Counted from the stretch's first letter, positions 1 through 56,144 are shown. The stretch is DNA of 64,000 nucleotides from Mobula birostris (GCF_030028105.1 NC_092379.1:29009821-29073820), one strand, 5' to 3'. Program-made: numbers and translations. Notes: generated by a model from the letters alone, not told the origin.

Positions 1-849
1 TAACTGAATCGATGCAATTATAGGACAATAATAAACACATTCCGTTCGCAATCAAGGTACATACACCAAAATACTCCATGTGGTGATTACATCGGATCCG
101 TTAAATCTGGTTGGGAAACCAGATTATACAAGTTATCACTCTGTTGTGATCCCATTTCCTCTCTTCCTTTCTCGCTCTTTCATTCTGAATATGACTTCAA
201 AATATGAGTCTTAGCGTAGTATGCGGTCGCCTATATGTATTTTAACCAAAAGTTAATTTCAACACTGAACCTCTTGCACACAGCACGGGAATACACCGAC
301 GAACATAGTATCTGCATCTCTATCACGCTAAACATCTGCAGGTTCTGTCGGATTATCTAAGCACTCCGTATAAACCATGGATAGCTGTTGTATCTTCCTT
401 AATTTCAGTGGGTTGTTAATTTCTGGGTTTCGTCAGCATGCCGCTTTCAATTCTTTGTCATTCTGGAAAACACAGTTTTGCCACCCTCTGTTTTCCATTG
501 ACCACTTTAAATATATTCCGGTGCCACTCTGTCCGTATTATTTTTCCTTGCAAACAAACGAACAAACTGGCCAAAGACAATGTCAGACAAGGCTGTCAAT
601 CGTTCTATACCCTTACAGGAAAAGAAGATGGGCGAATGCACATTGCGTTATTCAGGAAATGAATTGTAAATTTCCAGTTCGGTTGCGCCTTGCAATCAGA
701 AATTGTTCCTTTAGATTCGGTGCCTTGTGCTGCTGCTTACAGAGCTCTTAGGCATGGCACGTGACCATGGACGATTTCCGGGTGCGCCCCTTCCAGATTC
801 GCCGCGAACAGGCGCCCTCCTGTGAGAGCTTTGTGCATCATACAGGACT

Positions 850-888
850 AGTTTTTGTCCGGACCCGCCGTCTCCATACAACAATGTG
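850..888 (-). other. 23-RSS of V at 889-1308
   Basis: CACATTG + 23 nt (TTGTATGGAGACGGCGGGTCCGG) + ACAAAAACT. Confidence 0.9.
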
Positions 889-1308
889 GTACTCATTGCA
901 CAGAGATACCTGCCCGAGTCCGACACGAGAACTTCACTAATGTTCAATTGAGCCGTCTTGCTGACTCTCTGCAAACTAGCGGTAAACCGATTATTTCGAT
1001 GCATTCCTCCAGTGCTAGATACCTTCAGCAAATACTTTGGCGGTTCTCCACTATGTTGAATGTACCAAAAGCTATATGCAGCATCGTCAGTGTAATTACA
1101 GTTCAGTGTAATGTTCTGTCCTTCCTTGGCCGTTAAGTCGGGAGGATCCTGCGTTACTGAATCTTTCCCACTCGCTCCTGCAATAAAGGACAGAATACAT
1201 CAACAACGCCGGCTTGTATTGAACGCCGGGGAAATTCGCTGGCCATCTTCGCAGAAACTCACCAGGCAGCACAGCCAATGCGATCATTAATAAACAGAGG
1301 GAAATCAT
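889..1308 (-). CDS. TCR alpha/delta-like V segment, family A, intact (leader 1263-1308, V exon 889-1177)
   Basis: Leader MISLCLLMIALAVLPG with GTGAGT donor and TTGCAG acceptor. Open V exon ASGKDSVTQDPPDLTAKEGQNITLNCNYTDDAAYSFWYIQHSGEPPKYLL...SDSGRYLCAMS with both Cys and the Trp. Followed directly by a 23-RSS. Confidence 0.9.
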
Positions 1309-2629
1309 GGTGCCTAATTTCTGGCTGAATCCAACGGCAGATGCCTTCCAGGACGTGATTATCACTCAATAGATATTGGGGTGTGAGGCCTTTTCAGCGA
1401 TACCTTTCACCTTATGTAATAGCAGGAGCGTTTTCCTGGTTAAAGGACTTGGCTGACACGATAAACCGAGACTTTGTGAGCACCAATCAGAATCTGTTTT
1501 TCTCATACGTCATTCTGCCTGTTTCTCCGCTATTTCAATGCCCCGCGTTCCTCTCTCTCTCTCACTCTCTCGCTCGCTCGCTCTCTCTCTCTCTCGTTCT
1601 TTCTCTGTCTGCCCTACTGCCTTTGTTACCCGGTTATCTGCAGAATCGCAACATATTCAAACACTTATCAAAGTGTAATCATACTCAATTAGGCACTTTC
1701 CACATGGTCGTTTCTTCGACATCGACAGTATCCCGCTAGAAGTAGCTCATTTATTTATTTGTTTGTTTAGTTAGTTATTCGGTGATATATCCCACAATAA
1801 TCCCTTAGTTCAACATTTTTCAATCTTCCGGCATTGAACTAGTTATTCAATGCCAGCAAGTGTTCATCTAGTTTTCGTTTGCTGTTGCGGAGCCAATCTG
1901 CTATCCACGCCAATAGACTCCTGAAAGCACACTTTGCGTCGCCAGCGCTCTCTTCGTTCAAAAAAAAATAGTCACATTTGCATGCCCCTTGTAATTATTT
2001 CCAATCGCATTAAATTATCGTAACCTCGCATTAGCCATTTCCACACTTATGTCAAAGCGCTGATTGTCCTCTCTATCTATGCCTCTGGACATATTATACA
2101 CAGTTATTAAGTTACCCCTCATCTTCTTCCTCTACAGAAAGAAAGGACCTTGTTCGCAGAAACTGAGGTGACCGGTGGAAGAAACAGGCATTTGCGATGT
2201 GTAACTGAAGTTGAGCATTACGATTCCTCTTCCTTTAATTGTTGATGCAGAGAGCCAGATCTTTCCCACACGCTTTCATAGAAGAAGGATGAAATAACTG
2301 AACATCAAGTGCTCTCATTGCACCTGCGAAACACCCACTGACTACTTAGGAAAAGAATCGCCAGGCAGCTTAGACGATATAATCAGTAAGGGTCAAGGAC
2401 GCACATGGCGTCTGCTCTCACGCACGTTCTTAAGCAGATAACAAGAAGCTGATACCACAGATTTGCGAGAATTATGTCAGATACACTACACCCTTCACTT
2501 CGTGGAAAACCTCCTTAATTTGTTCTTCTAACTGGAAGTTCAACCTTGGAAGTCAGAGCTGAGCCTATTTAACCACCGACATGCATGTTACTAATACACT
2601 CTCTGTTTATTTATCAGTCACTCACTTTC

Positions 2630-3335
2630 ATTCAGGTGCCTTGCCGTTCGGCGTTGGCGATCATGTCTCTCCTTCCATCACAGTCCCTGACCTCCAAATT
2701 GTAATTTTTGCCTGCCCTGTTTCTAACCATGATGTTATTCCATCTATCATTTTCATTCTCTGTCTCGCCCTGCTTCTCTTTCTTCCAGTTTTCCAGTTGT
2801 AACTAAATGATCTAATGTCTATCTTCGGATGATGTGTCCAAAGAATTTTGATTGATGTTTTCTGATTTTTAAGTAATGTATGTTTTCTTTTCGTTCTCTG
2901 TAGAGCTTCTTCGTTGGTAAATCCGTCCGTATATGATATGCATAGCATTTTTCTGAGGAACCACATCTCTGCTGCAATGATTCTATCTCCAATTGCATTT
3001 GTGATGGTCCATGACTCGCTACCATACACCAATATAGGGCGAATTTAGTAACTAAGAGTTGTAAGACGGATGTCAGTTGCTGTTTTCTTGTTCGTTAGAA
3101 TGTTTCTGATTTCTCTAAATGCTGTTCTTGCCATTGCTATTCTTGCTTTTATGTCTGTTTCGCATTTGCCATCAGATGTTACCCATGATCGAAGGTACTA
3201 GAAGTAGTGAACATGTTTCAGGATTTCATTTCCCAATAGGATCCTACAGTTTGGGATATCAGGTTTATTTGATATTACCATTACTTCGGCTTTCTTTTTG
3301 TTTAAGGTTCGTCCAAGTCTTTCGCTGTCTGTGTT
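2630..3335 (-). mobile_element. RTE-clade LINE, 3' fragment, disabled
   Basis: Minus strand translates, with stops, to LNKKKAEVMVISNK...YLRSWVTSDGKCETDIKARIAMARTAF...YGSESWT...AAEMWFLRKMLCISYTD, the typical RTE RT C-terminus. Absent from the paralogous blocks. Confidence 0.8.
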
Positions 3336-4027
3336 GAAGGTAGATCATTCACTCTAACTATATTCTGTTTGTCAATCTCACTTTTCCCTTTTTCGTTCTA
3401 CTTTAATAAACACTTCATTTCTTGCAACGAATCTCGGTCTTTGTTCCCTATTCTGTTACTGTCCTATATTTCCGTCGCTATGTCAGTCAATGTCTCCCAG
3501 TCTGCCTCTGTATTCCAATTTTACTAAATCATCAATGTACAAACGTAACTTAAAACTTGTTGAGGGAACTTCCTTTCAACCAACGCCAGTCCATTCGGTA
3601 TTAATTTGCAATTCGTAAAATAAACATCCATTTATCTGAAATTTTAGGACGCTAATGTCAACAGACACAACCTGCAATTTATTTTCATCACAAGCATTCG
3701 GTGTGACAGCATGTCGAATGCTATCTAGTTATATACACCCTCAGTATCTCTAGACTGCAATCATCTTCACTGTTAATACCTCGAGGTAGTGAAAAATGAA
3801 GTCTAGCAAAAAATTAACCACAAGATATTCTTGGAGGCAACAGAGCGACATGGATACCGCAATATAGTAGAAATACTTCGGAAAGCCGCCACAATTTCCC
3901 TAGGTAAATCTAAATTCAAGAAGTGTTCCACAAGTTGGGTCACATTTTGTTGCTGAATGCGGCATTTCAAATCGACCGCGTGATTTTCATGCTTTCTGCG
4001 TACAGCTGTTCCAGTTCCGCGGCAAAA

Positions 4028-4042
4028 GGCGCCCTCTAGTGA
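4028..4042 (-). promoter_or_regulatory. CTCF-consensus motif downstream of the V RSS
   Basis: TCACTAGAGGGCGCC, 13/14 match to CCASYAGRKGGCRS. Binding is inferred, not shown. Confidence 0.6.
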
Positions 4043-4093: not shown

Positions 4094-4519
4094 GGGTCCT
4101 TTATACAGAGGTACTGTATACACTTGAGTCCTGGACAAGAATTCCAGAGATACTTGAATGAGCTGACCCTGCCTCTGTGCATTACAACTGTAAACCTCGC
4201 CCGACATTCCGAGGCTGCTGCAGTTTTACTCAGCGATATAGCTACAGCAGTCTTTAGGACATACTCTGCGATGCTGAGTGTATCAAATATGTTTGTCTTA
4301 GTTCGTGTGCAACTGCATTTCAGTGTTATCGTCTGACTTCCGTCAGCCGATAATTCAGGAGCATCCTGATCACAGAATTGTACTTTCTCGTTCCTGCAAT
4401 AAAGGACAGAATGGAGTGACTTCCCTGACTTGCACCGAACTACGCTCTCACTGGTCATGTGTGCAGTATTTTAGCTGTCCGGATGGCGAATGAAACCTGT
4501 AAGAAACGGAGGGACACAT
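4094..4519 (-). pseudogene. V pseudogene, family B
   Basis: Frameshifted leader (ATG 4517-4519) with donor mutated to CT. Acceptor at 4394. V-like DAPELSADGSQTITLKC with frameshifts and lost Trp. Degenerate RSS (CTCAGTG). Confidence 0.8.
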
Positions 4520-5319: not shown

Positions 5320-5782
5320 AGAGCAGGCAGACATTGCGAACATTGAGGTGTCCAGATCCTGTATCGCCGTGGAATGTTGATGCTGAACTGCGCAAAGCTA
5401 TTCAGTGGATTCCGGCACGATTCCCCCGAACTTATTTAAGCGGAACATCTTTTCCCAGAGACCCGGAATATTACTGGATTGTCTTCACGTAGAACAATAT
5501 TCCTGTCATGAATATTTTCATCGGTTTTCCAGAATATTGCGCGCGCGACAAATAGGTTCTGCCAGATTCCAAGTAACTGCATCTAATTGACAAGGTTTGC
5601 CCTTCCACGGTCATTATATCTCTCTTTCTGAGGTTCACAAAATCTACCTCACTCGTCCCTGTATCAAACCCCGAAGGTGTGAGGGGCGCCTAAACGCAGT
5701 GACCTTGGAGCGAACGCTCTGACGGCTTCGCCGGATTCACCAAACAGAGTAGTAAGTACAAAGAACATCGCAGTGGGAACAT
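5320..5782 (-). pseudogene. Decayed V pseudogene, family D
   Basis: Leader-like exon 5741-5782 with GTGAAT donor and acceptor at 5659. Exon reads GTSEVDFVNLRKRDIMTVEGQTLSIRCSY...QYSGKP, with stops and the Trp lost. Homologous to the plus-strand copy at 16250-16735. Confidence 0.7.
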
Positions 5783-6790: not shown

Positions 6791-8124
6791 GAGGAATGTG
6801 CGACAATTGGGCCGATAAATCAGTTGACCATAAGACCATAAGTATCAAAGAACTGAATTAGTCCACTTGACCTATCGAGTCTGCTCCACCATTTCAGATG
6901 AGACAGTGTGGCAATAGAACTTTTCGGCACCATAAACATATAATTAATATAATTGGTTCAAAAATAGTCGAAATAGACCTTTGGAAACAGAAGCTATCAC
7001 TGTGTGCTCCCTCGATAGTAACCGGACGTTCCCTCTCTTTGTCTCTTCGATGGTGAGCTGATTCAAAGTTCCAAAAGAAGCAATAGATTATTTCCTTTGC
7101 AAGTGTATTAAACGGCAGGATGAAACTGAATCTCAATCCCATCCACCTCTGTATGACCTTGCTCTTTAGTTCCTGCCTGCGCTGCATTTTTATACGGCCC
7201 TTACAATTGATTTTTGCATTATTTTATTGTTTAACTTTGTACTACCTCCATAAGGGGTGTATTGAATTCATCTGTAAAAACAGAATCAAGGCGATCATGT
7301 GACAGTAATAAATAAATTCCTATCCAATTTGCATATGTAGAGAACTTCACGTGGCGGTAACATTAGATCACTTAAGTCTGGTTGGGAAACCAGATTATAT
7401 AAGCAATCACCCTGTTATGATCCCATTCCCTCTCTCCTCCCTCGCTCTCTTTTAGACTGCAAATGCCTTCAAAAATATGAATCTCGGAGTCGTATGCGAT
7501 CACGTACATGTAGTTTAATCATAAATTCACTTTAAGTATTGAACCTCTTTCTCACAGCAACGACCAAAATAGTATCTGCATTCTCTATCACGCTAAGCAT
7601 CCGCAGGCTGTGTCGCATCATCTGAATTCTCAAAATACACAATAAGTAGTTTTTTTTTCCAACATCCTGACTTTCATTAGCGTGCCACTTGTAATTCCTT
7701 ATCAATCTGAAAACCACAAACTTGCACACCATCTATTCTCCTTAAGTCAGTCATTGTGTCATTTAAATATATCCCGAATCCACTCCGTTCTCATTATTTC
7801 TCACTGCAGACACTCAAACAAAGGGCCATAAGACAATGTCAGGCAAGGGTCTCAATGGGGATATGCCGTTGCAGCAACAGAGCGTAGGTGAATGCACATT
7901 CCGATATCCCGGAAAGTTGTGTAATTCCAGTTTGGGTCCGCGTTGTAATCAGCAACAGTTCCTTTAGATTCGGCGTCTTGTGCTCTTAGGTAGGATACGT
8001 GACCATGGCTGATGGGGCACCCCTTCGAGTTTCGTCGCAAAAGGACGCCTTCCAGTGAAAGCTTTTAGCATTATACAGGACCCACTTTTTGTTTGGAGAT
8101 CCGCCGTCACCGTACAACAGTGTG

Positions 8125-8555
8125 CTGTTCATTGCACAGAGGTACATGCCAGAGTCTGACACAAGACTTCACTGATATTCTATGGAGCCGTCTTGCTGGC
8201 TTTCTGCAAACTAGCGGTAAACCTCACTGGGCAATCTTGACGGCACTCCATTCCTCTTGTGTTATATAACGTCAGCAAATAATTTGGACGTTTTCCGCTA
8301 TGTTGAATGTACCAAAAGATATCTGCACTAGCATAAGTGCAATTACAGTTAAGAGTTATGTTCTGTCCTTCCTCGGCCGTTAGGTCGGGAGGATCCTGCG
8401 TCACTGAATCATTTCCGCTTACTCCTGCAAAAAAGGGCAGAATACATCGACATCACTGGCTTGTATTGAACGCCGGGGAAATTCGCTGGCCAGCTTCGCA
8501 GAGATTCACCAGGCAGCACAGCCAATCCAATCAGTAATAAACAAATGGAAATCAT
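8125..8555 (-). pseudogene. V pseudogene, family A
   Basis: Intact leader 8510-8555 (MISICLLLIGLAVLPG) and V exon from 8424. In-frame TAG at 8180-8182 plus a 1-nt deletion before the DSG motif. RSS CACACTG + 25 nt + ACAAAAAGT. Confidence 0.9.
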
Positions 8556-11732: not shown

Positions 11733-11948
11733 GACAACCACAAGATATTGTGATAGGCAACAGAGTGACACCTAGACACCGAGATATAGTGGAAATGCTT
11801 CGGAAAGCTTCTGCAATATCCTTAGTTAAACCGGAATTCAAGAAGTGTTCCTCAATGTTGTGCGCATTTTGGTGCTCAATGCAGCGTTTTAAGTTGATCA
11901 CGTGATCTTTATACTTTGTGCGTCTCGCTGTACCGGTTTCCCAGCAAA

Positions 11949-11963
11949 GGCGCCCTCTGGTGA
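11949..11963 (-). promoter_or_regulatory. CTCF-consensus motif (belongs to the V pseudogene at 12654-13058, displaced by a Penelope insertion)
   Basis: TCACCAGAGGGCGCC, 13/14 match to the consensus. Confidence 0.6.
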
Positions 11964-12605: not shown

Positions 12606-12653
12606 GCAAACCTGGAGTTTGTCCGGACCTAAAGTCTCCCTGCTAATCCTGAA

Positions 12654-21960: not shown

Positions 21961-22220
21961 CACAGAATGACTAATTCTATTTCAGGTACACTGTGAATGA
22001 GTTGCATGTCTACTGTTTGGGTACATTTTGAATTCAAGAACTGTTCCAAGCCTGGACGCTTTTGCTACTCAGTTCAGCCCAATCGAACCAGTGACTCTCG
22101 CAGATCTCTGGTCACGCCACTTATAATTTCTCGGAAAAATGCACTTTTTAGTGAGCGCTCATTGCATAACCCATGGTTCATGTTTGTACAGACCCGTGCT
22201 CACCCTCCCGCAGCACTACG

Positions 22221-27009: not shown

Positions 27010-27560
27010 GGAAGTTTAAAGTTCGAAGTTTAAAGTACAGATATGACACTTCATATTACCCTGAAATTCTTCTTGCAGGCATTCACAATAAATAAAAAGA
27101 AACACGATAGACTCAAAGAAAACCTGCAACGACGAACAAACATGCAAAATGCAAACGGCCTCAAATTATGCAACTACAAAATGAAAAAAAAATCAAAATG
27201 ATAATAAGTAAAAAACTATGTCAAAAGCTCTGAGAACAAGAGTTGCAGCGTCCTTGAAAGTGAGTCCATAGGCTGTGGAAACATTTCATTGCTGGAGTGA
27301 GTGAAGTTATCTACTCTGGTTCAAGAGACTGTTGGGTGAGGGGCTACAGCTGTTTCTGAACCTGAGGGGATCTAAGTCTCATGTGCCGCCTTCCTGATGG
27401 CAGCATGGAGAGGAGAACATGATCTGAATGGTGGTAGTCCTTTATGATGGAAACTGCCTTCCTCCTTGTTCAATGGTGGGGAGAGCTTTACCTGTGATGA
27501 ACTACCCTGTATTCACAACTTCTTGGAGGCTTCAGGAATAATTCTCTCGCTTGGGCAGCA
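27010..27560 (-). mobile_element. Rex1/Babar-type LINE 3' end, decayed
   Basis: Decayed 3' ORF (ccttcctgatggcagc, reverse LPSGR) followed by a UTR and a short tandem tail. Confidence 0.5.
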
Positions 27561-27654
27561 CACCAAGAGCCGAACACTTAGGTGTCTATGCTGACCCTCA
27601 GTAATTTGTGTGTGTATCATTTCTGTTTTCACTGCGACTTGTCCTGTACTGAGA

Positions 27655-28050
27655 GCCTATTTGAAGACAAAGAACATATTTCGTAATTCATCACTAGAAT
27701 CCGGGTTATATTTAATTGTACGGTTTCCTGTATTTTCCTAAGAAGTGGGTATATCCCACTGGGCATTCTGGCCACTGTTTCATATCTCCTAACTCACATA
27801 TCTTCACCCTGTATATAGGAGATTCCTGATGATGCTGAGTGTTCAAATATATATATAATATGCTCTTCCTAGGTCATTAATCGCGCAGCTCCTGTGTCAC
27901 TGAATCGTTTTCCATCGTTCCATCAACAAAGCACATAGTGGCCAAACACCTCAGGACTGTGCTTAATCCTTGGAACATTCAGGAACAACGGGTGACCTAC
28001 CTGGCACAACGACTGTGACAATTTGGAACGTCGACGTTAAACACGTTGCG
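27655..28050 (-). pseudogene. V pseudogene, decayed
   Basis: Leader end FQIVTVVVPG|GTAGG. Exon GTMENDSVTQELRD...TQHHQESP...WPECPV...VQLNITRILV, with an internal deletion and frameshifts. Confidence 0.7.
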
Positions 28051-31378: not shown

Positions 31379-33460
31379 NNNNNNNNNNNNNNNNNNNNNN
31401 NNNNNNNNNNNNNNNNNNNNNNNNNNNNNNNNNNNNNNNNNNNNNNNNNNNNNNNNNNNNNNNNNNNNNNNNNNNNNNNNNNNNNNNNNNNNNNNNNNNN
31501 NNNNNNNNNNNNNNNNNNNNNNNNNNNNNNGTATCAGACACTTAACTCACCCAAGTCTGGTGAACCCAATTCAAATCTTCCCGCTTCAACAATTGATGAT
31601 CCACTAGCATTTGTCTTGTTTCTATTCGCCCTTTGGGGTGAATGCTGTTTACTGATAGACCGCAGTTCAACATTCCGACGATAGGCTGTTAATACCCATT
31701 GTTCTGCACCCGTGAGTTCGAATACTCAGTTCAATTTGGGTAATTTCAATTTCTACTTGCCAGGATCGGTGAAATGTATTTTCCCCACAAGTTAATAAAC
31801 CAAGGGTCAAATTCAATTTAAAATTGCGGACACCTGAAGGAGGAAATATGGAACTACAGTTCCGAACTACTCAGATGATCTGAAAATACATATGGAAAGA
31901 CAGAGTTTTCAATCCTCTTATCTACACGTTATTTTGAAGCTGTTAAAGCGCACGAGCTCTCCGTCTACAGAGTGAATTTTAAACACTGGATACTTGTTCT
32001 GATGGCCAGTGGCGAACCAGGATGAGAAAATCTAGTTATGAGTGTGCCCTCAAGTCAATATAATGACAAAAGCATTTTGTTACTGAAAGAAGTGCAACAG
32101 CGCACTCTTTTTCCAATTTCCTGAACGAGTTACAGAGATGTTTTGAGCAGGAGGAAATTACAGTGTCAACACCCACCCTGACAACCTCAATGCCACTGAA
32201 ACCACAGACACGGTTGTGAGTGCAATATTCGTCTCCAGGAGAGTGAAACAACGCAAATAATTTGGACGGATTGGTGTCGGAGGCCATGACCTTAGATATT
32301 GCACAGTTCAGCTGGCGGCTTCTTTTCAAACGTTTTGACCCTCCCATTGTTTTAACCTGATTCTCTCATCTGCCCTAAGAATACAACCATCGGATCCGCA
32401 CTTATAAAAACATTGTAACACATGACCCCGAGAATTCATTCCGATTTGCACTGATGCACAATACAATGCTCTCTATATGAAAGCATTTTCTTGCCCCAGT
32501 CTGCAAGAAACTCCAGAGTAATGGACACAATTCAATGATTTCAAACTCAAGGATTTCATACAATAATTCTGCCTATATTTTCGCCACCTGGGTAAAGCTG
32601 TCAGCAAAAGCAAACGCTTTAACCACTTCTAATATTTTCTCTTTTGGTCCACGCATAGAGAAGAAGATCCAGGGTAAAGGGCAGCACCTACCATGCCGAC
32701 ATATGCGCAATGATTTTTTTTAACTTATATTGACCTGGTTGTGACTTTGCACTTTTTCATCTACCTGCAGTGCACTTTGACTGTAGCTGCTACATTCTAT
32801 TCTGCCTCTTTCCGTTTCGCTCTTTTTCCCTCTCCCTCTCACTGCTCCCGCCTACACAGCGTGAGAAAATGACTACAGTCATAGCATCCGTAAATTACGT
32901 CATGTAACACGTAGTCCCTTTATGAGCATATCAACTTACATTATAAGTAGATGTCGTAACGTCATTTAATGTAGCGCATTCCCACCAGTCATGCACACTA
33001 ACTACCCATTTATCCCCTCTCTTTACTTTCCTTTCCTGGTCCATAGACTCTAGCTGTATCTTTATTTTGATCAGTTGCGTTTTGATGTGATCCATTCCCG
33101 TCTTGACATGTACAGTTTCGGCATTTGCAAGCTCCTCCCTCATCTTCACTGTAAGAACCTCTAAAATCTCTGCCAAAGTTGTGAAAGGCGATGTCCAGCA
33201 AAAATATCAGGCAGATAATGGATTTGTAGATAAACGGGGAAAATGGACTTCCATGTGTGGGAAATGTTCAGTAACGTTTCAGTTTGTGCAACCTGGTACA
33301 CATTCACTTGACGGATAGTTCCTTAAGCCTGCATATCTTTTGCGAATATGTTTCACATTCTTAAGTCGATCACGTGACCGTGGAGGATTTGTGTGTGAGT
33401 CCCTGGCAGTTTTCCCGCAAAGGGCTCCCACTAGTGGGCATTCATTGTATTGCGGAGGTC

Positions 33461-40645: not shown

Positions 40646-40784
40646 TATTTGAAATCCAGACCGATTTATTTTGCTTTTGAATATCGCCCTCTTAAGTCAA
40701 ACATGTAATTCTCGCAAATATCTGGGTGCGCCACTTCCAGTTTTCATCCAAATGCCGCCATCTGGTAGCCGTTTACTGCATCAT

Positions 40785-42924: not shown

Positions 42925-44808
42925 GTTGTCTGCAATAAATCAATAATAGGATTTTATGAAATTGTTACTCGAGAGAAGTTATAGATTCAGTTCAGGGGCA
43001 GAAGAGACTCAGGTGGAACTAGAAAGCGTGACTCTCGCACCTCATTCGTCACTTACTCAAGGTGTATGATTATGGAATCAATCAGTACAATTATGTGTTC
43101 ACAGAAGCCCTTAGTTTCCCACTCATGATCCCCATCGGCGATATTCTTCTTGTAGTCTGAATCCTTCCCACACTGGCCCTCCTTGCTTTGTTTCTCTCCC
43201 GCAGTTAACTTCTCAACTGTTTGTCACTCTTTTCTCCTATCTCTTTCCCCTTCTCTTTTCCTTTCACAGTTTTGTTCTTCCTCTCTTTTACCCAATTCTC
43301 TATTCTGCTCTGTCTCACACACACCCACATGCGCACACATCCTCTCTCTCTCGCTCTCTCTTTCTCTTTCTCTCTCTCTCTCTATCTATCTATCTCTCAC
43401 TCTTACTTTCACTCTCCCTGTCTATCGCTAGTTTGCTCTGTGCCATATGCAAGTACACAGTTTGTATAATAATGGTTATACGACGTTGAATTTCTGAAAG
43501 AGGTTGTTCCCTTGTTTTACTGTTCTGTGTGGTGCCTGGAGACAATGCAGCGGTTAATATCACGTACAGCAGTTGTGAGATATGTACAGACAACCGAACG
43601 TTGGATGCTGATGTTAGAGAATGAAGATGATACCTGGAGTGGCGAAATGGCCTGTTCTTTCTCCTCTTGCTAATAACAGTTACGCTCTAAATTATCCTGG
43701 TTACTTCGGTTGACTATTCAGAAATGTGATCGTCACAGCTCACATTCTCAGTAAACAGAGCAGAAAGCATTGTGACGATAGTCAAGGGCAAAGACGAGAA
43801 GTTCGTTCTTGTGTGGTTTCGGATTTAAAAGTAAAACGGACTCTCTCTCCACGAGGCACATTCACGGAAGCTTCATTCGGAGTGCAGTGAGTCTCCTTTC
43901 AACAGATGTTTCAGGAGGTTCGGTGTTTATAGTGCTGAAGATGCTGTCTGTCCAAATAATCATATCGATTGAACCGTCCACATCTGTGTTGCAGAGCGAA
44001 GTATAAGCATTATTGGACATATAAAGTTTTTATGTGGCTTACCCAGTGAACCGAGGACGCTTCTCCTGGCAAAAGCAGCCAGGGTATTGAGACTTCGATA
44101 GGATTGAGAGGCATTGTCTTCAGAATGTGGGCTGAATATGGTGGAATCAGAATAGGAAAGGAAGGAAACCTGCGACCAGATAGGGGCGGGCTATCGGGAA
44201 GCTGGGGGGAGCGGGGTCGACATAGGTTATCAAGAGAGGATCGGAGTAGTTGTGGAAAGAAAATAATTCTCGGGGGGAAGGTTGGAGCGGGTTGGACAGG
44301 AGGAATTTTCTGAGGGGGATTTACGTTGATCAGAAGGAGAGACAGGGAACAGTATTGCCGGAGGATTTGAACATTGAGAAATAAAACTTAATAACATCGT
44401 TTTGCAGATACTCCATGGGAAAATACATGCAGTTCCATCAGTTTGTATTTTGCTTCACACTGCTATTGGTGGAAGCCGGCAAGGTCCGACTCTCCGTTTA
44501 TATCAAAACGCTATCCTCGTCTGTGCATCTTGCGGTCCTCCTCCCCTTCGAGTTCGAAACTGTAAGCAAGTAAAGAAAAGCAATAAGTAACGTCTTTTCT
44601 GAGCATAGGAGTCGGGTGTTCAATCTCTTGTCCCCTAACGGTGTTGTCTTCATAGGGCTCTGTCCTGGGAAGGTGTGAAGGTGCCTGGGTCTCGTGGCTG
44701 GGCTCACATTGATGTGGAGGTTAGGCTGAGGCCACCCTCTGGTATCAGAGCTCACTGCAGTCAGGATCTATTATTTGTCCAGATCCGCCTTCATCCCCAA
44801 TCTCTGTG

Positions 44809-45080
44809 GGCTAATTTGCGCAAAGATGCAGCGCAGAAACCCACACAAGAACTCCGGAGATAGTTTCCTGCTCTGGAAATACTGACATGGTTGTCTTCAG
44901 ACCGAGCGACGTAAGCAAGGATGAAGATTGTAAACATTTTTCGAAAGTTTCCGAGATACTGACTGTTCTACAGGTAGGCATTGGTAGTTCCTGAGTAATT
45001 TCAGCTCAGCGACATGCTCTGTTCTTCCTAACTCAATAATTCCTTCCGATCCTGGCTCAACTAATCCGGCCCATTCGTAC
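44809..45080 (-). pseudogene. V pseudogene with a retained 23-RSS (44770-44808)
   Basis: GTNGPD*LSQDRKELLS*EEQSMSLS*NYSG...TISGVLVWVSALHLCAN*. RSS CACAGAG + 23 nt + ACAAATAAT. Leader not found (CR1 debris upstream). Confidence 0.8.
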
Positions 45081-46680: not shown

Positions 46681-46856
46681 CCCGCAAGCAAAGCAGCTGT
46701 CCAACTAAATGAAAAATGTAGTCAGTAATTTCTCCCCTTCCCCTGGAGTTTCGCCTTCTTAAGTCAATCACGTGACAGTGGTGGATATGTGTTTGCGCCC
46801 GGCTGTTTGCCGGCAAAGTGCTCCCTCTAGCGAGCGCTCACTGTATCACGGACGTC

Positions 46857-46895
46857 GAATTTTGTCCAGAGCCAGCATCGCCTTGCAACACTGTG
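46857..46895 (-). other. 23-RSS with consensus heptamer
   Basis: CACAGTG + 23 nt + ACAAAATTC. Confidence 0.92.
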
Positions 46896-47319
46896 GGCAC
46901 CATGGCACAAAGATAAACGGCGGAATCCGACACAAGAACACCAGTGATGTTCAAATGGGCTGCCTTGCCGTCACGCTGCCAACCAGCGGTAAACCTCGCT
47001 GGATTCCGGTCCATCTGCCCACTGCTATATACCGTCAGCAAATATCTTGGAGATTCCACGCGACGCTGAACGTACCAAAAAATAGATTGAGGAACGCCAG
47101 TGTAATTACAGTTCAGTGTTACACTTTGTTCTTCCGCAATCGTTAATTCAAGAGGCCATTGCATCACCGAATCTTTCCCATTTGTTCCTGCAATAAAAGG
47201 ACAGAATGCATGCATAAATTGGACTTTCTTCATACATACGGAACAGATATAGGGCGTTACCGCAGGGACTCACCGGGCAGCATAGTCAATATAATTAGCA
47301 GATAACACAGAGATTTCAT
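46896..47319 (-). CDS. TCR alpha/delta-like V segment, family C, intact (leader 47274-47319, V exon 46896-47187)
   Basis: Leader MKSLCYLLIILTMLPG with GTGAGT donor and TTGCAG acceptor. Open exon TNGKDSVMQWPLELTIAEEQSVTLNCNYTGVPQSIFWYVQRR...SDSAVYLCAMV. Confidence 0.92.
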
Positions 47320-48206
47320 GGTGTCTGCCTTCAAACTCGATCGAAAGACAGCCTACTGTCAATAGGTTAATATCCTTGACCGATCTTGAAGAGTAAAATC
47401 AGATCTGTAGCATATTTCAGCTGGTGTAAATCTGGGGGCGTTTCGCTGCCAATGGATTGATTGGCTGTGAGCATCGATCTGCGCCGGTCCGAGCACCAAT
47501 CACGGATCGGTTTCCTTCAGTTCCTCAATATGCTTTTATAAAACGGACGCCCGGAGCTGTAAAGAGCGTCGCGCTAACCACTGTGCCAGAGAGTGGTTAT
47601 ATCTCATTCTCTCTCTTGCCTTCTTCTTCCAGTCAGCCTCCCATCGCTGCTTCTCTCTCCTCCCAATGTTTATCGCAGTAATCTCTGTTCTATCGATAAC
47701 CATCTCTCGCTCGCTCACTTCAATTCTCTTCCATCTCCCCGAGTTATCCACTTTGTCATTCCATCATACCAAACCGCCCACATTCTCCCCCCATTTTACT
47801 CACCATATCAATCGCCCACCGTTTTCCCTAGATTTCACTTCCTCTGCCCACTCGCAAACCGGAATTCACACTCAGACGCGTTTATCTTCACATTTCTACC
47901 CTCCGCCAAACGGGCGAAACGCTACTGAGGCAGACAATAAGAAAAACGTCTTCACTCGGGGGAAAGGGGATGTGCTTTCTGTGCTAGTTTCTTGTCTCTC
48001 TGCGCTTCAACCTTCTCTCTCCAGGAAAGTCCTTGTCGCTTGTGTCTTGTGGACGGGCGAGAGTTGGATGAAAAAATTGCAGATGCTGAAAATCCAAAGC
48101 AGCTCACAAAACTCTGGAGGAAGTCAGCAGGTCAGGCAGAACCTTTCTCTATTCTGCTCTCTCTCTCACACACACACACCCAAATGCACACGCACATTCT
48201 CTCTCC

Positions 48207-48264
<58 letters not shown>

Positions 48265-48674
48265 CTCTTTTATCTATCTCCTCTCTCCTTTGCACGGATT
48301 TCCTGTGTTTTCTTTGTTAGGCACTGTGCAATGTAAATATATCACGTTTTTAGGCAATACTTATTATTTCTCGCTGCAGACTCTCGGAGAAAGCGGCCAA
48401 AGACAATGTCAGGCAAGGTTGTTAATCGTAGTATGCCGTGGCGGCAAAAGGGAATGGGTGAGAGCACATTGTGGTATTCCGGAAATGCATTGTAAAGTTA
48501 CAGTTTAGCTGCGCATTGTAATCAGGAAATGTTCCTTTAGATTCGGCGGCTTGTACTGCTGATTCACGCACACTTAAGGAGGACACGTCACCATGGCTGC
48601 TTTCTCGGTGCGCCCCTTCCAGTTTCACGGAAAGAAGACGTCCTGCAGTGAGTGCTTTTTGAATTATAGAGGAC

Positions 48675-49100
48675 CAGTTTTACACAAATGCCAGAATTCA
48701 ACATAAGAGATTGAGCGCTATGCAATTGAGCCGTCCAGCTGCCTTTATGCAAACTAGTGATAAATCTCACTGGGAAATCTGGATGTCCCTCCATTACTGC
48801 TGTACTATAATTTGCTTCAGCAAATAATTTGGAGTTTCTCCACAATGTTGAATGTTCCAAAATCTATCTGCATCAGCGTAACTGTAATCACATTTGAGTG
48901 TTATGGTCTATCCTCTCTCAGCCGTTCAGTCAGGAGGATCCGGCGTCACTGAATCTTTCCCATTCGCTTCTGCAATAAAGGACACAATACATCAACATAG
49001 CTGGCCTGTATTGAACGCCGGGGAAATTCGCTGGCCACCTTCAGAGGCTCCTCGGGAAGCACAGCCAATGCAATCAGTCATAAACATAAGGAAATATTGG
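48675..49100 (-). pseudogene. V pseudogene, family A
   Basis: Start codon lost, TGA in the leader, donor mutated. Several in-frame stops. A deletion removes YLC, the heptamer and the spacer. Abuts an N gap. Confidence 0.85.
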
Positions 49101-49447: not shown

Positions 49448-51491
49448 AAGAGAGAGAGAATGCCTGTGAAACGATCAAATGTTGCAGTAAACAACTAGCT
49501 TTTGTTTTACTGTAGACCAAGCCACTCTTTGTGTCTGTGGTTGTTTCGATGGTTGTTGGTGGTGGAAATGCTGATGCTTTATGCTAGAATAAGCGAGAGA
49601 GGTAGAAGTTGGTCAGGTTAATGCTGTTTGCCGCTGATTGTGCGAGGGATGTGACAGGAGACGTTTAGGTTCTTATCTGTTTCTCCGATATTGATGCTTT
49701 GTGTTTTTGTTCTGTTTTAAGGATGTCGGTGAAAACCATAAATTTCAGGTTGTGTATTTTGTACCTTCTCTGATTTTAACCGGAACCATTAAAACAAACT
49801 GGGCATTCTTTTCGCTGTACCCTGGTACATCTGACAACAACAAATATATAATAAACATAAGCCAGTTTGATGTAACTGTGAGCGTCTGCAAAGTGAAGGA
49901 ATATGTCAGGCTGTCCTTCATTAGTTTATAGAACATGGGTTGAGCAGGAAAGTGGTGGTGGTGGTGGTGGTGGACTGCACAGCGCCTATCATGGCACCCT
50001 GGCGATATCTGGTATCATGTCCCAGGGATTCGGTTCGATTCCGACCTTCCGATGTGTCAGCGGATACTTACGTGCTCAGCTTCCACAATTCCCGAGTTGC
50101 TATGTTTTCCACTGCCCGTAAAACACGCTCTGGGTCACTCGTGCTCGTGATCCGAAGATCACTGAATGTACATGTTAAGAATTTGCGAATTTGGACAGAT
50201 AAATCAGTTGAAAATAAGATCATCAGATATAGGAACTGAATTAGGTCATTTGACCTGTCGAGTCAGCTCCGCCATTTCAGATGACAAGGTGTGGTAATGG
50301 AATTATTCGACACACTAAACATACAATTAAAATGAGATTTTCATAAGGTCGAAATATACCTTTGGAAACAGATGCTATCAGTTTGTGCTCCTTCGACTGT
50401 AACCGGACGTTTTCACTGTTTTTTTCTCTTCTATCGCTGGACAAATACAAAATTCTAAAAGCAAGTTCCCATGAAACAACAATAGACTATTCCCACTTGC
50501 AAGAGTGGAAAACTGTAGGATGAAATTGAATCTTAATCTTGGTATGACCTTCCTCTTTATTTCCTGCCTGCGCTGCATTTTTATACGTCTGTTCCACTTT
50601 ATTTATGTATCCTTTTATTGTTATATTTTCTACTATCTCGATAAGCTGTGTAGTGAATTCATCTGTATAAACAGAATCAATGCAATAATGCGACAATAAT
50701 TAACAAATTCGGTTTTCAATTTAGATATGTAGCAAGATGCTACACGTGCTGATAACATCGGATCCGTTAAATCTGGTCGGGAAACCAGATTATACAAGCA
50801 ATCACATTCCCATTCTCTCTTTCTTCCCTCGCTCTCTTTTATACTGAAAATGCCTTCAAAAATATGAATCTCAGGATAGTATGCGGTCACGTATATGTAT
50901 TTTAATCATAAATGTAATTCAAACATTGAATCTTTTTCTGACAGCCTGGAATGCAACGACCAAAATAGTATCTGCATTCTCCAACACGCTAAGCATCCGC
51001 AGGTTCTGTCGAATTATCTAAATACTCAGTATAAATCATAAGCAGCTGATGCAACATCCTTAATTTCAGTAGCATGTCACTTGCAATTACTTGTCAATTC
51101 GAAAATGACCAATTTTCACACCCTCTGTTTCCTTTAGTCAGCCATTGTGCTATTTAAATAAATCCCGGTTCCACTCCGTCCTCATTATTTCACACTGCAG
51201 GTACCTGAACAAAGTGGCCAAAGACGATGTCAAACAAGGCTGTCAATCGTGATAAGCTGTTGCAGCAAAAGACGGTGGGTAATTGTACATTCCGGATTGC
51301 AGAAAGTTATAAAGCGGAGCTTCTGTCCGCGTTGTAATCAGGAACTGCTCCTTTAGCTTCGGCGCCTTCTGCTGCTGAATGCAGCGGTCTGAATTAGGGC
51401 ACGTGACTGTGACTGATTTCTGGGGGTGCCCTCTGCAGATTCCTCGGAAAAAGGCGCCCTCCACTGAGACCTTTTTGCAATATACAGAACC

Positions 51492-51530
51492 AGTTTTTGC
51501 ACGGACACGCCGTCTCCATATAACAGTGTG
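51492..51530 (-). other. 23-RSS
   Basis: CACACTG + 23 nt + GCAAAAACT. Confidence 0.9.
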
Positions 51531-51962
51531 ATACTCATTGCACAGAGATACACAGCAGAGTCCGACACAAGAGCATCGCGGATATTCAGTTGCGACGTCT
51601 TGCTGCTTTTCTGTAAAGTAGCGGTAAACCTTTCTGGACAATCAGAATGCCGCTGCATTTCTCCTGTGCTATATAGCTTTAGCAAATAATTTGGAGGTCC
51701 TCCACTGTGTTGAATGTACCAAAAGATATATGGATCATCGTAAGTATAATTACAGTTCAGTGTTATGTTCTGTCCTTCCTTGGCAGTTACATCGGGAGGA
51801 TCCTGCGTCACTGAATCTTTCCCACTCGTTCCTGCAAGAAAGGACACAATACATCAACAACGCTGGCTTGTACTGAATGCCGGGCAAATTCGCTAGCCAG
51901 CTTCGCTAAGACTCACCAGGCAGCACAGCCAATAAGATCAGCAATGAACAGAGAGAAATCAT
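51531..51962 (-). CDS. TCR alpha/delta-like V segment, family A, intact (leader 51917-51962, V exon 51531-51831)
   Basis: Leader MISLCSLLILLAVLPG with GTGAGT donor and TTGCAG acceptor. Open exon TSGKDSVTQDPPDVTAKEGQNITLNCNYTYDDPYIFWYIQHSGGPPNYLL...DCPERF...SDSAVYLCAMS. Confidence 0.92.
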
Positions 51963-53809: not shown

Positions 53810-53810
53810 T

Positions 53811-54744
53811 AAACACAAAATAATCTGCAGATTATTTTGCTGATTATCTGCAGATTGGAAGAGCAGCACCTCATATACCATCTAGGTAGTCTCCGGCCCC
53901 TTGGTATGAGTATAGGATTCTCCAACTTTCGGTAGTTCCCCCACCCCCCCACTTCCTCTTTCCCTATGTCACTCTTCCCCCTCCACCAGCTGCCTATCAC
54001 CTCCCTCATGGTACACCTCCTTCTACTACCCATTATATTTCCCCCTGTTCCTTCTTCAGCTTTCCTGCCTATCACTTCCGTGCTGCCCCTCCCCCACCCC
54101 CTTCATCTTTCCTTTTACTGGTTTTTTACCTGGAGCCTACCAGCCTTCTCCTTCCCACCCTCCCCCCACCTTCTTTATAGGGCCTCTGTCCCTTCCCTCT
54201 ACAGTCCTGACAAAGGGTTCCGGCCCGCCCGAAACGTTGACTGAACGTTTCCATGGATGACAATAGACAATAGACAATAGACAATAGGTGCAGGAGTAGG
54301 CCATTCGGCCCTTAGAGCCAGCACCGCCATTCACTGGGATCATGGCTGATCATCCACTATCAGTATCCAGTTCCTGCCTTATCCCCATAACCTTTGATTC
54401 CGCTATCTTTAAGAGCTCTATCCATCTCTTTTTTGAAAGCATCCTGAGACTTGGCCTCCACAGCCTTCTGGGGCAGAGCATCCCATATATTCACCATTCT
54501 CTGGGTGAAAAAGTTTTTCCTCAACTCCGTTCTAAATGGCCTACCCCTAATTCTTAAACTGTGGCCTCTGGTTCTGGACTCACATATCAGCGGGAACATG
54601 CTTCCTGCCTACAGCGTGTCCAATCCCTTAATAATCTTATATGTTTCAATAAGATCCCCCCTCAGCCTTCTAAATTCCAGAGTATACAAGCCCAGTCGCT
54701 CCATGATGATGCCCGACCTGCTGAGTCCTCCAGCGTGTTGTGGG
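53811..54744 (+). mobile_element. Penelope-like element 3' end (interrupted by CR1)
   Basis: RLEEQHLIYHLGSLRPLGMSIGFSNFR* at 53852-53935, UTR, mutated hammerhead at 54202-54243, terminus resumes at about 54705. 24-bp palindrome at 53816-53839. Confidence 0.75.
54259..54703 (-). mobile_element. CR1 3' fragment nested in the PLE
   Basis: LGLYTLEFRRLRGDLIETYKIIKGLDTL...RKNFFTQRMVNIW, 3' UTR and a (CTATTGT)n tail. Confidence 0.9.
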
Positions 54745-55567
54745 TCATGACTTGGACTGGACTGGAACACGAAACACAGAGCCGGGACCCCTCCTTGGAA
54801 ACAGGACATGGGGCCGGGACTCTACTTAGACACGTAACACAGAGCCAGGAGCGTTCTTGTGTGCAGGACATAGGGCCGGGACTCTTCTTATACATGGAAC
54901 GCTGAAAACGAAGAGACAGATCTCCACTCAAGGTAGCGGCAAACCGCCGGACCTTCCTAGCGAAGGCGAGGACACGAAGAGACAAGACCACACAACAATA
55001 GACTGTTCCTTCTATTGACGCGACAAGGCTCCAGTCTCACTCCGGCAGGTTAACTTGACGGGGATTCTGCCGAAGTCAGAGACGAGGTACAGACGAGGTA
55101 GAGACGAGGTAACTCACAGGGCATTCTGGCGGGGACGGTCCAGCCACTATCACTGGACCCCAGAGCTATTTATGTTGCCAGTCCGAGACGAGAAACAGTT
55201 GCCTTAATTAAGGCTCCCAAGGGTACAAAGGAAAAACGGAATAACCGGAGTACGGAATCCACGGAGCGGACCGTGACATCCGTAAATTGCTCTGTAAATG
55301 GGAACTGAGCTGGGGAAGTCAGAGCTGAGCCTATTTAGCCAGAGATGTGAATGGAACTACAACATTGTCAGTTTCTTAATAATTTACTCTAATTCTAATG
55401 TATTTGTCGATCTCACACTTCTGTCCTTCGTTGTACTTTAAATGGTACTTCATTTCTAGCAATGGATCGTCGTCCTTGGTCCGTCTTTCTTTACTCTCTT
55501 AAATTTACGTCACCATGTCACTCTGTGTCTGTCTCTGTATTTCAATTTAGTATTTTATTTCTCTACC

Positions 55568-55570
<3 letters not shown>

Positions 55571-55657
<87 letters not shown>
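55571..55657. repeat. (CT)n microsatellite
   Basis: Pure TC run of about 87 nt. Confidence 0.95.
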
Positions 55658-55659
<2 letters not shown>

Positions 55660-56129
55660 GTACATCCTTTTACAAGCTGCCAGACCACTCGGTATTCATT
55701 GTCATTCTGAAAAAAAAATCAATTGTTCTCCACTTTTAAGAAGCTAATGTGTTAATAGAGCGAACCTGAAATTTATCTTCATCAGAAGGATTTACATGAC
55801 AGCTTAGCCGATGCTGTCTAGTCACATGCACCCTTAGTATCTCCAGGTTGCACTCATCTTCACTGTTAATCGCTCAGGCCAATCAAAAATTATGTCCATC
55901 CAAATGTTAACCGCACAATGTTGTTATAGGCAGCAGACACACAATATTGTTATGGACACTGAGATATAGTGAAAAATGTTTCGGAAAAATGCCACAGTAA
56001 TCCGAGGTAGAGCTGAATTCAAGAAGTGTTCCTCAATGTTTGGCGCATTTCGCTGCTCAATGCAGCATTTTAAGTAGACCACGTGATCCTTATGCTTTGT
56101 GCGTGCGGCTGCTCCAGTCTCCCAGCTAA

Positions 56130-56144
56130 GGCGCCCTCTAGTGA
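56130..56144 (-). promoter_or_regulatory. CTCF-consensus motif downstream of the V pseudogene
   Basis: TCACTAGAGGGCGCC, 13/14 match to the consensus. Confidence 0.6.

What the first reader, a model, noticed from the sequence alone, without database searches (positions are those of the whole stretch)
811..56144. CTCF-consensus motif at a near-fixed distance downstream of the V RSSs, all in one orientation
Seen in the sequence, on the V sense strand after the nonamer: TCACAGGAGGGCGCC (811-825, gap 24 nt), TCACTAGAGGGCGCC (4028-4042, gap about 14), TCACCAGAGGGCGCC (11949-11963), CCACTAGTGGGAGCC (33423-33437, gap 23), CTACCAGATGGCGG (40755-40768), ATACCAGAGGGTGG (44732-44745, gap 24), TCGCTAGAGGGAGCA (46819-46833, gap 23), TCAGTGGAGGGCGCC (51453-51467, gap 24), TCACTAGAGGGCGCC (56130-56144). 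These match CCASYAGRKGGCRS at 11-13 of 14 positions across V families whose flanks otherwise differ. Established knowledge: mouse D-proximal Igh VH genes carry CTCF elements just downstream of their RSS, oriented toward DJ-C, that stall cohesin loop extrusion and license RAG scanning. Inference: a comparable RSS-proximal CTCF architecture operates in this cartilaginous-fish TCR V array, which would push loop-extrusion control of V(D)J choice back to the gnathostome base. I am not aware of it being described here but cannot search the literature.
Basis: partly seen in the sequence, partly recalled or inferred. Interest (0 to 1): 0.85.

Follow-up and report, generated by a model that had tools for sequence, protein, structure and literature searches.

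The report
CTCF-type sites behind ray TCR V genes
In this ray T-cell-receptor V-gene array, each V unit carries just past its recombination signal a same-direction motif for the genome-folding protein CTCF; the motif is identical in a skate, but it is decaying in many copies here and was not seen in the sampled shark, bony-fish, amphibian and lizard arrays.

Summary
Most start 23-25 nt beyond a 23-RSS nonamer. Only 5 of 9 are good CTCF matches (13.7-17.8 bits). The other four (6.5-8.7 bits) would pass as chance if they were not homologous in position.

The flanks do not "otherwise differ": the motif lies in a ~170-bp block that was co-duplicated with every V unit (12-13 copies).

The core is still the most conserved part of that block. 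Its base pattern fits the CTCF matrix at one offset and one orientation only. A little-skate V has the identical 15-mer, although 62% of the aligned flank positions differ.

Constraint is uneven. A pseudogene subfamily keeps the core, while the subfamilies holding the intact V genes let it drift.

The layout was absent from the sampled amphibian-like (0/12) and skink (0/9) arrays and from 2-3 other cartilaginous-fish-like V segments. It was nearly absent from a teleost array (1/13). The "gnathostome base" inference is therefore not supported for this locus type.

This scan had already noted the same layout elsewhere in this genome: in TCR-beta arrays and in this array 0.44 and 1.0 Mb away. No published description was found. 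CTCF binding remains untested.

The parts
811..825 (-). CTCF-like core of the intact V unit (V exon 891-1169, 23-RSS 850-888). TCACAGGAGGGCGCC, weak at 7.5 bits, 24 nt after the nonamer. E-box TCACGTG at 758-764.
4028..4042 (-). CTCF-like core of a pseudogene V unit (V relic 4116-4368, subfamily B). TCACTAGAGGGCGCC, 16.8 bits.
8044..8058 (-). Decayed core (TCACTGGAAGGCGTC, 4.6 bits) of a pseudogene V unit (V 8127-8416, RSS 8084-8122).
11949..11963 (-). CTCF-like core, 17.8 bits, subfamily B. A ~650-bp repeat insertion (11990-12655) separates it from its V relic (12634-12940).
22140..22154 (-). Homologous core position with the motif lost (TCACTAAAAAGTGCA), behind V relic 22226-22514.
27532..27656 (-). 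Weak 13th copy of the post-RSS block behind V relic 27665-27906 (profile E = 0.023).
33423..33437 (-). CTCF-like core of an intact V unit (V 33505-33792, RSS 33461-33499). CCACTAGTGGGAGCC, 13.7 bits, 23 nt after the nonamer. E-box at 33370-33377.
40755..40769 (-). CTCF-like core, 16.2 bits, behind V relic 40789-40959, whose RSS has been deleted.
44732..44746 (-). Weak core (ATACCAGAGGGTGG, 6.9 bits) behind V relic 44817-45072.
46819..46833 (-). Weak core (TCGCTAGAGGGAGCA, 8.7 bits) of an intact V unit (V 46898-47179, consensus RSS 46857-46895), 23 nt after the nonamer. E-box at 46768-46775.
48637..48651 (-). Decayed core (TCACTGCAGGACGTC) behind V relic 48687-48961, whose RSS is largely deleted.
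51360..51467 (-). Intact V unit (V 51533-51823, RSS 51492-51530). The primary core 51453-51467 is weak (6.5 bits). There are two further same-strand CTCF-like matches at 51424-51442 (11.7 bits) and 51360-51378 (14.5 bits). E-box at 51400-51406.
56130..56144 (-). CTCF-like core, 17.4 bits, subfamily B pseudogene unit (V relic 56191-56407). E-box at 56080-56086.

Best explanation
Each V unit of this TCR alpha/delta-type array was duplicated together with a ~170-bp post-RSS module. The most constrained part of that module is a CTCF-binding element. Its 15-bp core starts 23-25 bp beyond the 23-RSS nonamer and reads CCA..AG..GGC on the V-sense strand. A partial upstream (ZF9-11-type) TGCAGT block lies 3 nt 5' of the core.

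Inferred mechanism, by analogy with mouse Igh. CTCF bound here points its cohesin-interacting N-terminal side down the array, away from the V and toward where J-C should lie. It would stall cohesin-driven loop extrusion, so that the neighbouring V RSS dwells next to a RAG-loaded recombination centre. At the same time it would provide a same-direction anchor every 5-20 kb to fold the array. Because the element lies on the RSS side, it leaves on the excision circle when its V is used.

In this window the system is only partly maintained. About six strong sites survive (roughly one per 11 kb), mostly behind pseudogenes. The copies behind the four intact V genes are weakened.

Shown: sequence, position, orientation, conservation and recurrence in a skate. 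Inferred: CTCF occupancy, cohesin stalling and any effect on V usage.
For: Position and orientation.

Enrichment on one strand only: 6 against 0.62 expected at 13 bits or more, and 7 against 0.79 for the IUPAC pattern.

The core is the conservation peak. Between-subfamily identity is 0.61 for the core, 0.52 for the V exon, 0.34 for the linker and 0.2-0.3 for the distal flank. It is the top 15-column window among 9 lineages.

The lineage-weighted frequency matrix fits the CTCF matrix at a single offset and orientation (expected score +10.7 against a mean of -28.8, z = 5.65, r = 0.73). Per-position conservation follows CTCF information content (Spearman 0.59, p = 0.008).

Cross-species: 3/3 Leucoraja erinacea V segments have 17.1-17.5-bit same-strand sites 24-31 nt after the nonamer. 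An independent read-set contig (L004) is 1/1 at 17.5 bits. The skate core is 15/15 identical to the window's 4028 core, while 72/116 flank positions differ. Subfamily B shows core 2/45 against flank 129/387 differences.

The block is not a dispersed repeat: the profile hits only V-adjacent sites.

The upstream-motif consensus (CTGCAGTTCC-like) and its 2-7 bp linker range (PMC12885311) are compatible with the conserved TGCAGTGAG plus 3 nt.

Loop-extrusion signatures are reported in the little skate (bioRxiv 10.64898/2026.10.19.759930).

The density of strong sites is similar to bound CTCF sites in mouse V regions: 121 per 2.8 Mb in Igh and 144 per 1.8 Mb in TCRa/d (PMC5859386).
Against: No binding data exist.

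Seven of the 12 copies in the window score below 9 bits. The four intact V genes have 7.5, 13.7, 8.7 and 6.5 bits. Subfamilies A and C show core divergence equal to the flank (19/90 and 4/15 against about 0.25). So the element is not being kept where a licensing role would predict it most.

The most common base at motif position 4 is T rather than the strongly preferred C.

The copies are paralogous, so counts of sites are not independent events.

The convergent partner sites and the J-C end lie outside the window.
Confidence: 0.5

Rival explanations
1. The ~170-bp post-RSS block is a composite V-linked regulatory module (an enhancer or germline-transcript element, like mouse V8E/PAIR). The CTCF-like core is one of several factor sites, with the CACGTG E-box and the GGAACA block. 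It acts mainly through local chromatin accessibility or transcription rather than as a loop-extrusion barrier.
For: Several conserved blocks lie beyond the core: TTTGC..GGAAACTGGAA, TCACGTGA at about +45 (identity 0.60) and GGAACA..TTC.TGA (0.54). TCACGTG occurs 15 times against 4.7 expected, mostly in these units. In mouse, V8E enhancers sit immediately downstream of VH8 RSSs, and PAIR elements combine CTCF with other factors (PMC10390877).
Against: The E-box and the other blocks are not kept in the skate copies, while the core is. The core alone is the conservation maximum across lineages. No transcription or chromatin data are available.
Confidence: 0.2
2. Neutral carry-over: an ancestral V unit happened to have a CTCF-like sequence in its flank. 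The copies are simply inherited by tandem duplication and are now decaying, with no function in recombination.
For: All copies are paralogous parts of one duplication unit. Seven of 12 are degraded. Subfamilies A and C show no excess conservation of the core. The intact V genes have the weaker copies.
Against: The 15/15 identity between the skate and window cores against about 62% flank divergence, and 2/45 against 33% within subfamily B. The core is more conserved than the coding exon between subfamilies. Substitutions avoid the high-information CTCF positions. Unchecked notes from this scan report the same layout in TCR-beta arrays of this genome.
Confidence: 0.15
3. The conserved core is bound by a factor other than CTCF, for example another multi-zinc-finger protein or a lineage-specific one, and only resembles the CTCF motif.
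For: Position 4 is T rather than C in most lineages. Positions 11 (A) and 16 (G) are more fixed than the CTCF matrix requires. Conserved T-rich bases directly 3' of the core do not match the reported ZF1-2 downstream motif GAGCCA (PMC9004084).
Against: The matrix correlation is 0.73 with a unique offset and orientation. The commonest variants (TCACTAGAGGGCGCC, TCACCAGAGGGCGCC) are one base from canonical CTCF cores and score 17-18 bits.
Confidence: 0.1
4. The motif was delivered by a transposable element (as SINE B2 spread CTCF sites in rodents) that landed next to an ancestral V.
For: TE-borne CTCF sites are well known in mammals (my own knowledge). The window is rich in repeats.
Against: The element profile finds no copy away from a V 3' end in the window or in about 230 kb of other fetched loci. 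There was no Rfam, tRNA or SINE-type match.
Confidence: 0.03

Closest known systems
RSS-associated CTCF-binding elements of mouse Igh D-proximal VH families (7183/Q52 etc.; VH81X-CBE of Jain et al. 2018)
   Same: A CTCF core lies within 100 bp 3' of the V RSS, on the V-sense strand, with uniform orientation along the array. It is carried by functional and pseudogene V segments alike and is lost with the excised DNA when the V rearranges (PMC5859386 Table 2 and orientation section; PMC10390877).
   Different: The locus type differs (TCR alpha/delta-like V, not Igh), as does the vertebrate class (batoid). Here the element is part of a longer conserved module. Many copies are degraded, and the best ones sit behind pseudogenes. 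Occupancy and any effect on V usage are unknown.
CTCF sites of the mouse Tcra/Tcrd V region
   Same: The locus type is the same, and the density of sites is comparable (144 bound sites per 1.8 Mb).
   Different: In mouse they lie mostly upstream of V promoters or between genes and point both ways. Here they are RSS-adjacent and all co-oriented with V.
Mouse V8E / PAIR regulatory modules of distal VH8 genes
   Same: A conserved regulatory element lies immediately downstream of the V RSS and is co-amplified with a V family. CTCF is combined with other factor sites.
   Different: V8E is defined by open chromatin and enhancer marks, and PAIR by Pax5/E2A/CTCF binding and lncRNA. None of this could be tested here, and there is no sequence relationship.
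RSS-adjacent CTCF motifs noted by this scan in TCR-beta V arrays and other parts of this array in the same genome
   Same: Same genome, same idea: a co-oriented CTCF-type motif at a fixed distance behind V RSSs (notes s1-145128, s1-145130, s1-145193, s1-145196).
   Different: The spacing there is about 40 bp in TCR-beta, against 23-25 bp here. Those are AI notes that I did not re-test.

Membership tests
V-RSS-associated CTCF-binding elements (mouse Igh proximal-VH type) | The sequence matches the CTCF core motif well above chance | tested here: met
   Five of 12 window copies score 13.7-17.8 bits, and 4/4 skate and L004 copies score 17.1-17.5 bits. Strand-specific excess is 6 against 0.62 expected. 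Seven window copies are weak or lost.
V-RSS-associated CTCF-binding elements (mouse Igh proximal-VH type) | Located within about 100 bp 3' of the V RSS | tested here: met
   The core starts 23-25 nt after the nonamer in most units with an RSS, about 14 nt in one, and 24-31 nt in skate. The 11949 exception is explained by a repeat insertion.
V-RSS-associated CTCF-binding elements (mouse Igh proximal-VH type) | Uniform orientation, pointing from V toward D/J/C | tested here: inconclusive
   All copies are on the V-sense strand, the 'forward' orientation of mouse VH sites. J/C is not in the window, so direction toward it is inferred from V orientation only.
V-RSS-associated CTCF-binding elements (mouse Igh proximal-VH type) | Evolutionary constraint on the motif beyond its flanks | tested here: met
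   Conservation peaks on the core. Between lineages, core differences are 0.31 against flank 0.54. Skate against window is 0/15 against 72/116. Constraint is absent in subfamilies A and C.
V-RSS-associated CTCF-binding elements (mouse Igh proximal-VH type) | CTCF and cohesin occupancy in developing lymphocytes | not testable with these tools
   Needs ChIP or CUT&RUN in ray or skate thymus.
V-RSS-associated CTCF-binding elements (mouse Igh proximal-VH type) | Mutating the site lowers use of the adjacent V; convergent partner sites exist at the J/C end | not testable with these tools
   There is no genetics in this species, and the J/C region is outside the window.
TE-borne CTCF sites (SINE B2-like) | Many dispersed copies of the carrier sequence, independent of V genes | tested here: not met
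   The profile of the block hits only V 3' flanks in the window and in L002 and L004, with none in L001, L003 or L005. There was no Rfam match. Only this window and a few loci were searched, not the genome.
V-downstream enhancers (V8E/PAIR type) | Open, active chromatin and enhancer or promoter activity at a conserved post-RSS element | not testable with these tools
   Only the multi-block conservation and the CACGTG box could be shown.

The most novel reading that the evidence does not exclude
RSS-adjacent, V-co-oriented CTCF elements are an ancestral feature of cartilaginous-fish (possibly gnathostome) antigen-receptor V arrays. On this reading they are present in both the TCR alpha/delta and TCR beta loci of rays and skates. 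Cohesin/CTCF-guided presentation of V RSSs to RAG would then predate the split of cartilaginous and bony vertebrates. Mouse Igh would keep the old layout, while tetrapod and teleost TCR-alpha arrays lost or moved it.
Probability: 0.2. Interest if true: 0.85.

Novelty: new member of a known kind. Interest (0 to 1): 0.6.

Why it matters
How RAG finds V segments spread over megabases has been worked out almost entirely in mouse Igh and Igk. There, CTCF sites next to V RSSs stall cohesin and raise V usage.

Here the same architecture sits behind the V genes of a ray and a skate TCR alpha/delta-type locus. The motif is conserved while its flanks have randomised. Either this solution is much older than mammals, or it evolved more than once. 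That question is directly testable: the little skate is a laboratory species with Hi-C data, so CTCF/RAD21 profiling, thymocyte Micro-C, and repertoire sequencing against motif strength are all feasible.

The uneven maintenance seen here is also informative. Strong sites sit behind pseudogenes and weak ones behind intact V genes. That hints that the sites may serve array folding, as periodic anchors, more than licensing of the individual V next to them.

Tried and rejected
1. Word-indexed protein search with a window V exon: no hits. With skate P0003: only 3 hits.
2. A V-domain tree, to ask whether motif-bearing V segments form a clade: unresolved, with 11 of 15 inner branches open.
3. CpG observed/expected as a sign of germline hypomethylation: element 0.80 against background 0.64-0.68, so not distinctive. 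Dropped.
4. Rfam scan of the window: nothing.
5. Horn shark (Heterodontus, P0058) locus: gene found but no DNA served. Elephant shark P0006 and P0061: not on record. Shark and chimaera sampling is therefore very thin.
L003 and L004 remain of unknown species.
7. The reported CTCF downstream motif (ATT + GAGCCA) does not match the conserved TTTGC 3' of the core.
8. TE origin of the block: rejected on present data.
9. Species identity: only indirect. The LINE RT's best named hit is Hypanus sabinus at 86%. Other agents' notes call the genome giant manta ray. I did not verify this.
10. The species of assemblies GCA_933207985.1 (L001) and GCA_003427335.1 (L005) are from my memory (Pelobates cultripes, Chiloscyllium punctatum), not from a tool.

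Full report
**What is in the window**

The window is an array of T-cell-receptor V segments, almost all on the minus strand. tblastn with three V exons read from the window finds about 20 V segments or relics.

Four look intact: V exons 891-1169, 33505-33792, 46898-47179 and 51533-51823. Each ends in Y-L-C-A/V-M and is followed by a CAC-heptamer, a 23-bp spacer and an A-rich nonamer. The '...YLCAM' ends, the 23-RSS, the nearest relatives (TRAV-like arrays of other vertebrates) and a related V-J transcript with a TRAJ-like FGGGT motif (P0061) all point to a TCR alpha/delta-type array.

A LINE reverse-transcriptase fragment in the window is most similar to copies annotated in the stingray Hypanus sabinus (86%), then Mobula (72%) and Leucoraja (70%). 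The genome is therefore probably a myliobatiform ray. Other agents' notes in this scan call it the giant manta ray, which I did not verify.

**The observation**

All nine quoted strings sit at the quoted coordinates on the V-sense strand. Where the RSS survives, the core begins 23-25 nt after the nonamer.

They score 7.5, 16.8, 17.8, 13.7, 16.2, 6.9, 8.7, 6.5 and 17.4 bits. Five are good and four are weak.

Across the window there are 6 hits of at least 13 bits on the minus strand and 1 on the plus strand. A first-order Markov model expects 0.62 per strand. The tool's own IUPAC scan with dinucleotide-preserving shuffles gives 7 matches against 0.79 expected, six of them on the minus strand.

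The weak sites mean something only because they are homologous in position to the strong ones.

**The flanks do not 'otherwise differ'**

A profile built from the nine sites finds 12 copies. A later, longer profile adds a 13th, weak one. Every copy lies directly 3' of a V relic on the minus strand, and none lies elsewhere.

A wide alignment shows that intron, V exon, RSS and about 170 bp of 3' flank are homologous across all subfamilies:
- A: 811, 8060, 48650, 51453
- B: 4028, 11949, 56130
- C: 33423, 46819
- singles: 22150, 40755, 44732

The flank holds several conserved blocks. A TGCAGTGAGCGC stretch lies just 5' of the core. Then come the core, TTTGC..GGAAACTGGAA, a palindromic E-box TCACGTGA about 45 nt 3' of the core, and GGAACA..TTC.TGA.

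The 11949 site is far from its V because a ~650-bp repeat inserted between them. The 40755 and 48650 units have lost their RSS by deletion.

**Is the core constrained, or only inherited?**

Between subfamilies, identity is 0.61 for the 15-nt core and 0.60 for the E-box. It is 0.52 for the V coding exon, 0.34 for the 24-nt linker and 0.2-0.3 for the distal flank.

I then pooled 16 copies from 9 lineages: the window, three skate V segments and one independent contig. The most conserved 15-column window in the alignment is exactly the core.

The lineage-weighted base-frequency matrix fits the CTCF matrix at one offset and one orientation only. The expected score there is +10.7, against a mean of -28.8 over 316 alternatives (z = 5.65, r = 0.73). 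Per-position conservation follows the information content of the CTCF matrix (Spearman 0.59, p = 0.008).

The main departure is T instead of C at motif position 4. The conserved TGCAGT block 3 nt upstream is a partial match to the ZF9-11 upstream motif (CTGCAGTTCC-like). Its linker falls within the reported 2-7 bp range (PMC12885311). This is supportive, not decisive.

**Other genomes**

An exhaustive profile search with a window V exon returned multi-V gene-model chimeras, whose contigs I could fetch.

| Locus | Source | V segments with a post-RSS CTCF motif |
|---|---|---|
| L002 | Leucoraja erinacea (named by the source) | 3/3, 17.1-17.5 bits, 24-31 nt after the nonamer; one is the exact 15-mer of the window's 4028 and 56130 |
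| L004 | contig from read set SRR17051963, species unknown | 1/1, 17.5 bits, about 25 nt |
| L001 | GCA_933207985.1, tetrapod TRAV-like array | 0/12 |
| L007 | skink, Lerista | 0/9 |
| L006 | teleost, Danionella | 1/13 |
| L005 | GCA_003427335.1, which I recall as a bamboo shark | 0/2 |
| L003 | metagenome-assembly contig | 0/1 |

The skate core is 0/15 different from the window's 4028 core, while 72 of 116 aligned flank positions differ.

The layout is therefore shared by a ray and a skate, two batoid orders. It is not a general property of TCR-alpha-type arrays.

**Uneven maintenance**

Within subfamily B, which is all pseudogenes, the core shows 2 differences in 45 comparisons against 129/387 in the flanks.

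In subfamilies A and C, which contain the four intact V genes, the core diverges as fast as the flanks (19/90 and 4/15 against about 0.25). The intact V genes accordingly have the weaker sites.

One intact unit (51453) has two further same-strand matches, 28 and 92 nt downstream, at 11.7 and 14.5 bits. This may be site turnover.

The strong sites lie at 4028, 11949, 33423, 40755, 51360 and 56130, or one per 5-20 kb. That is comparable to the density of bound CTCF sites in mouse V regions. The pattern fits periodic, co-oriented anchors for folding the array better than strict licensing of each neighbouring V. The numbers are small.

**Comparison with what is known**

In mouse, CTCF sites lie within 100 bp of the RSS in the D-proximal VH families, and all V-region sites point toward D-J-C. 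In mouse TCR alpha/delta they lie mostly upstream of V promoters and point both ways (PMC5859386).

Proximal VH use depends on the site just downstream of the RSS (Jain et al. 2018, as cited in PMC10390877). Mouse VH8 genes also carry enhancers immediately downstream of their RSS (V8E).

The ray element therefore looks like the mouse Igh type placed in a TCR alpha/delta-type locus. Loop-extrusion signatures have been reported for the little skate genome.

I found no paper describing CTCF motifs next to RSSs in cartilaginous fish. The library searched is incomplete.

This scan has already noted the same layout in TCR-beta V arrays of this genome, and in this same array 0.44 and 1.0 Mb away. I did not re-test those notes.

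**Assembly gaps**

The three N runs are 1893, 459 and 732 nt from the nearest core. They touch no V exon, RSS or element used in the analysis. I made no attempt to fill them.

**Verdict**

The interpretation as an RSS-proximal CTCF element is well supported at the sequence level. Function is inferred, and the deep-ancestry claim is not supported by the sampling possible here.

Noticed in passing
window 758-764, 11898-11905, 33370-33377, 46768-46775, 51400-51406, 56080-56086 (minus strand): A palindromic E-box TCACGTG(A) lies about 45 nt 3' of the CTCF-like core in most V units (15 matches in the window against 4.7 expected). It is as conserved between the window's V subfamilies as the core, but it is not kept in the skate copies. 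It is a USF/TFE3/MAX-type site by sequence.
   Followed up: partly
window 39464-39482 (+): This is the only strong CTCF-like match on the opposite strand (AGGCCGGCAGGTGGTGCTG, 16.6 bits). It lies about 1.3 kb downstream of the V relic at 40789-40959. It could be a convergent partner or a chance or TE-borne site.
   Followed up: no
window 51360-51378 and 51424-51442 (-): The intact V at 51533-51823 has a weak primary core but two extra same-strand CTCF-like matches (14.5 and 11.7 bits) within 110 nt. This may be binding-site turnover.
   Followed up: partly
window 11990-12655: A ~650-bp interspersed repeat inserted between a V relic and its post-RSS block. Related copies lie at 53851-54225, 12362-12495 and elsewhere (85-88% identity).
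   Followed up: partly
window 5501-5644 (-) and 16424-16537 (+): Relics of a different V-like family (..EGQTLSIRCSYLESGRTYL..YSGKP..). One of them is on the opposite strand to the rest of the array. Neither has a post-RSS block.
   Followed up: no
window 37280-38712 (-): A LINE reverse-transcriptase fragment (Pfam RVT_1). Its best named relative is annotated in Hypanus sabinus (86%). Some database relatives are mislabelled as bacterial proteins (Proteus, Klebsiella), which is probably contamination.
   Followed up: partly
L001 (GCA_933207985.1) 23264, 27604, 42830, 61932, 95193, 95999, 104960, 115890, 117339 (+): This tetrapod TRAV-like array has no RSS-adjacent CTCF motif. It does have many strong V-sense-strand CTCF matches 1-2.5 kb from V segments (8 sense against 2 antisense inside the array). 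That is a different placement with the same orientation bias.
   Followed up: no
L006 (Danionella, GCA_007224835.1), V RSS at 15578: One of 13 teleost V segments has a 15.2-bit same-strand CTCF-like match about 27 nt after the nonamer, at the same spacing as in the rays. The other twelve have none.
   Followed up: no
window about 48200-48400 (-), downstream of the 48650 unit: A long (GA)n / (GT)n microsatellite follows the post-RSS block of this pseudogene unit.
   Followed up: no
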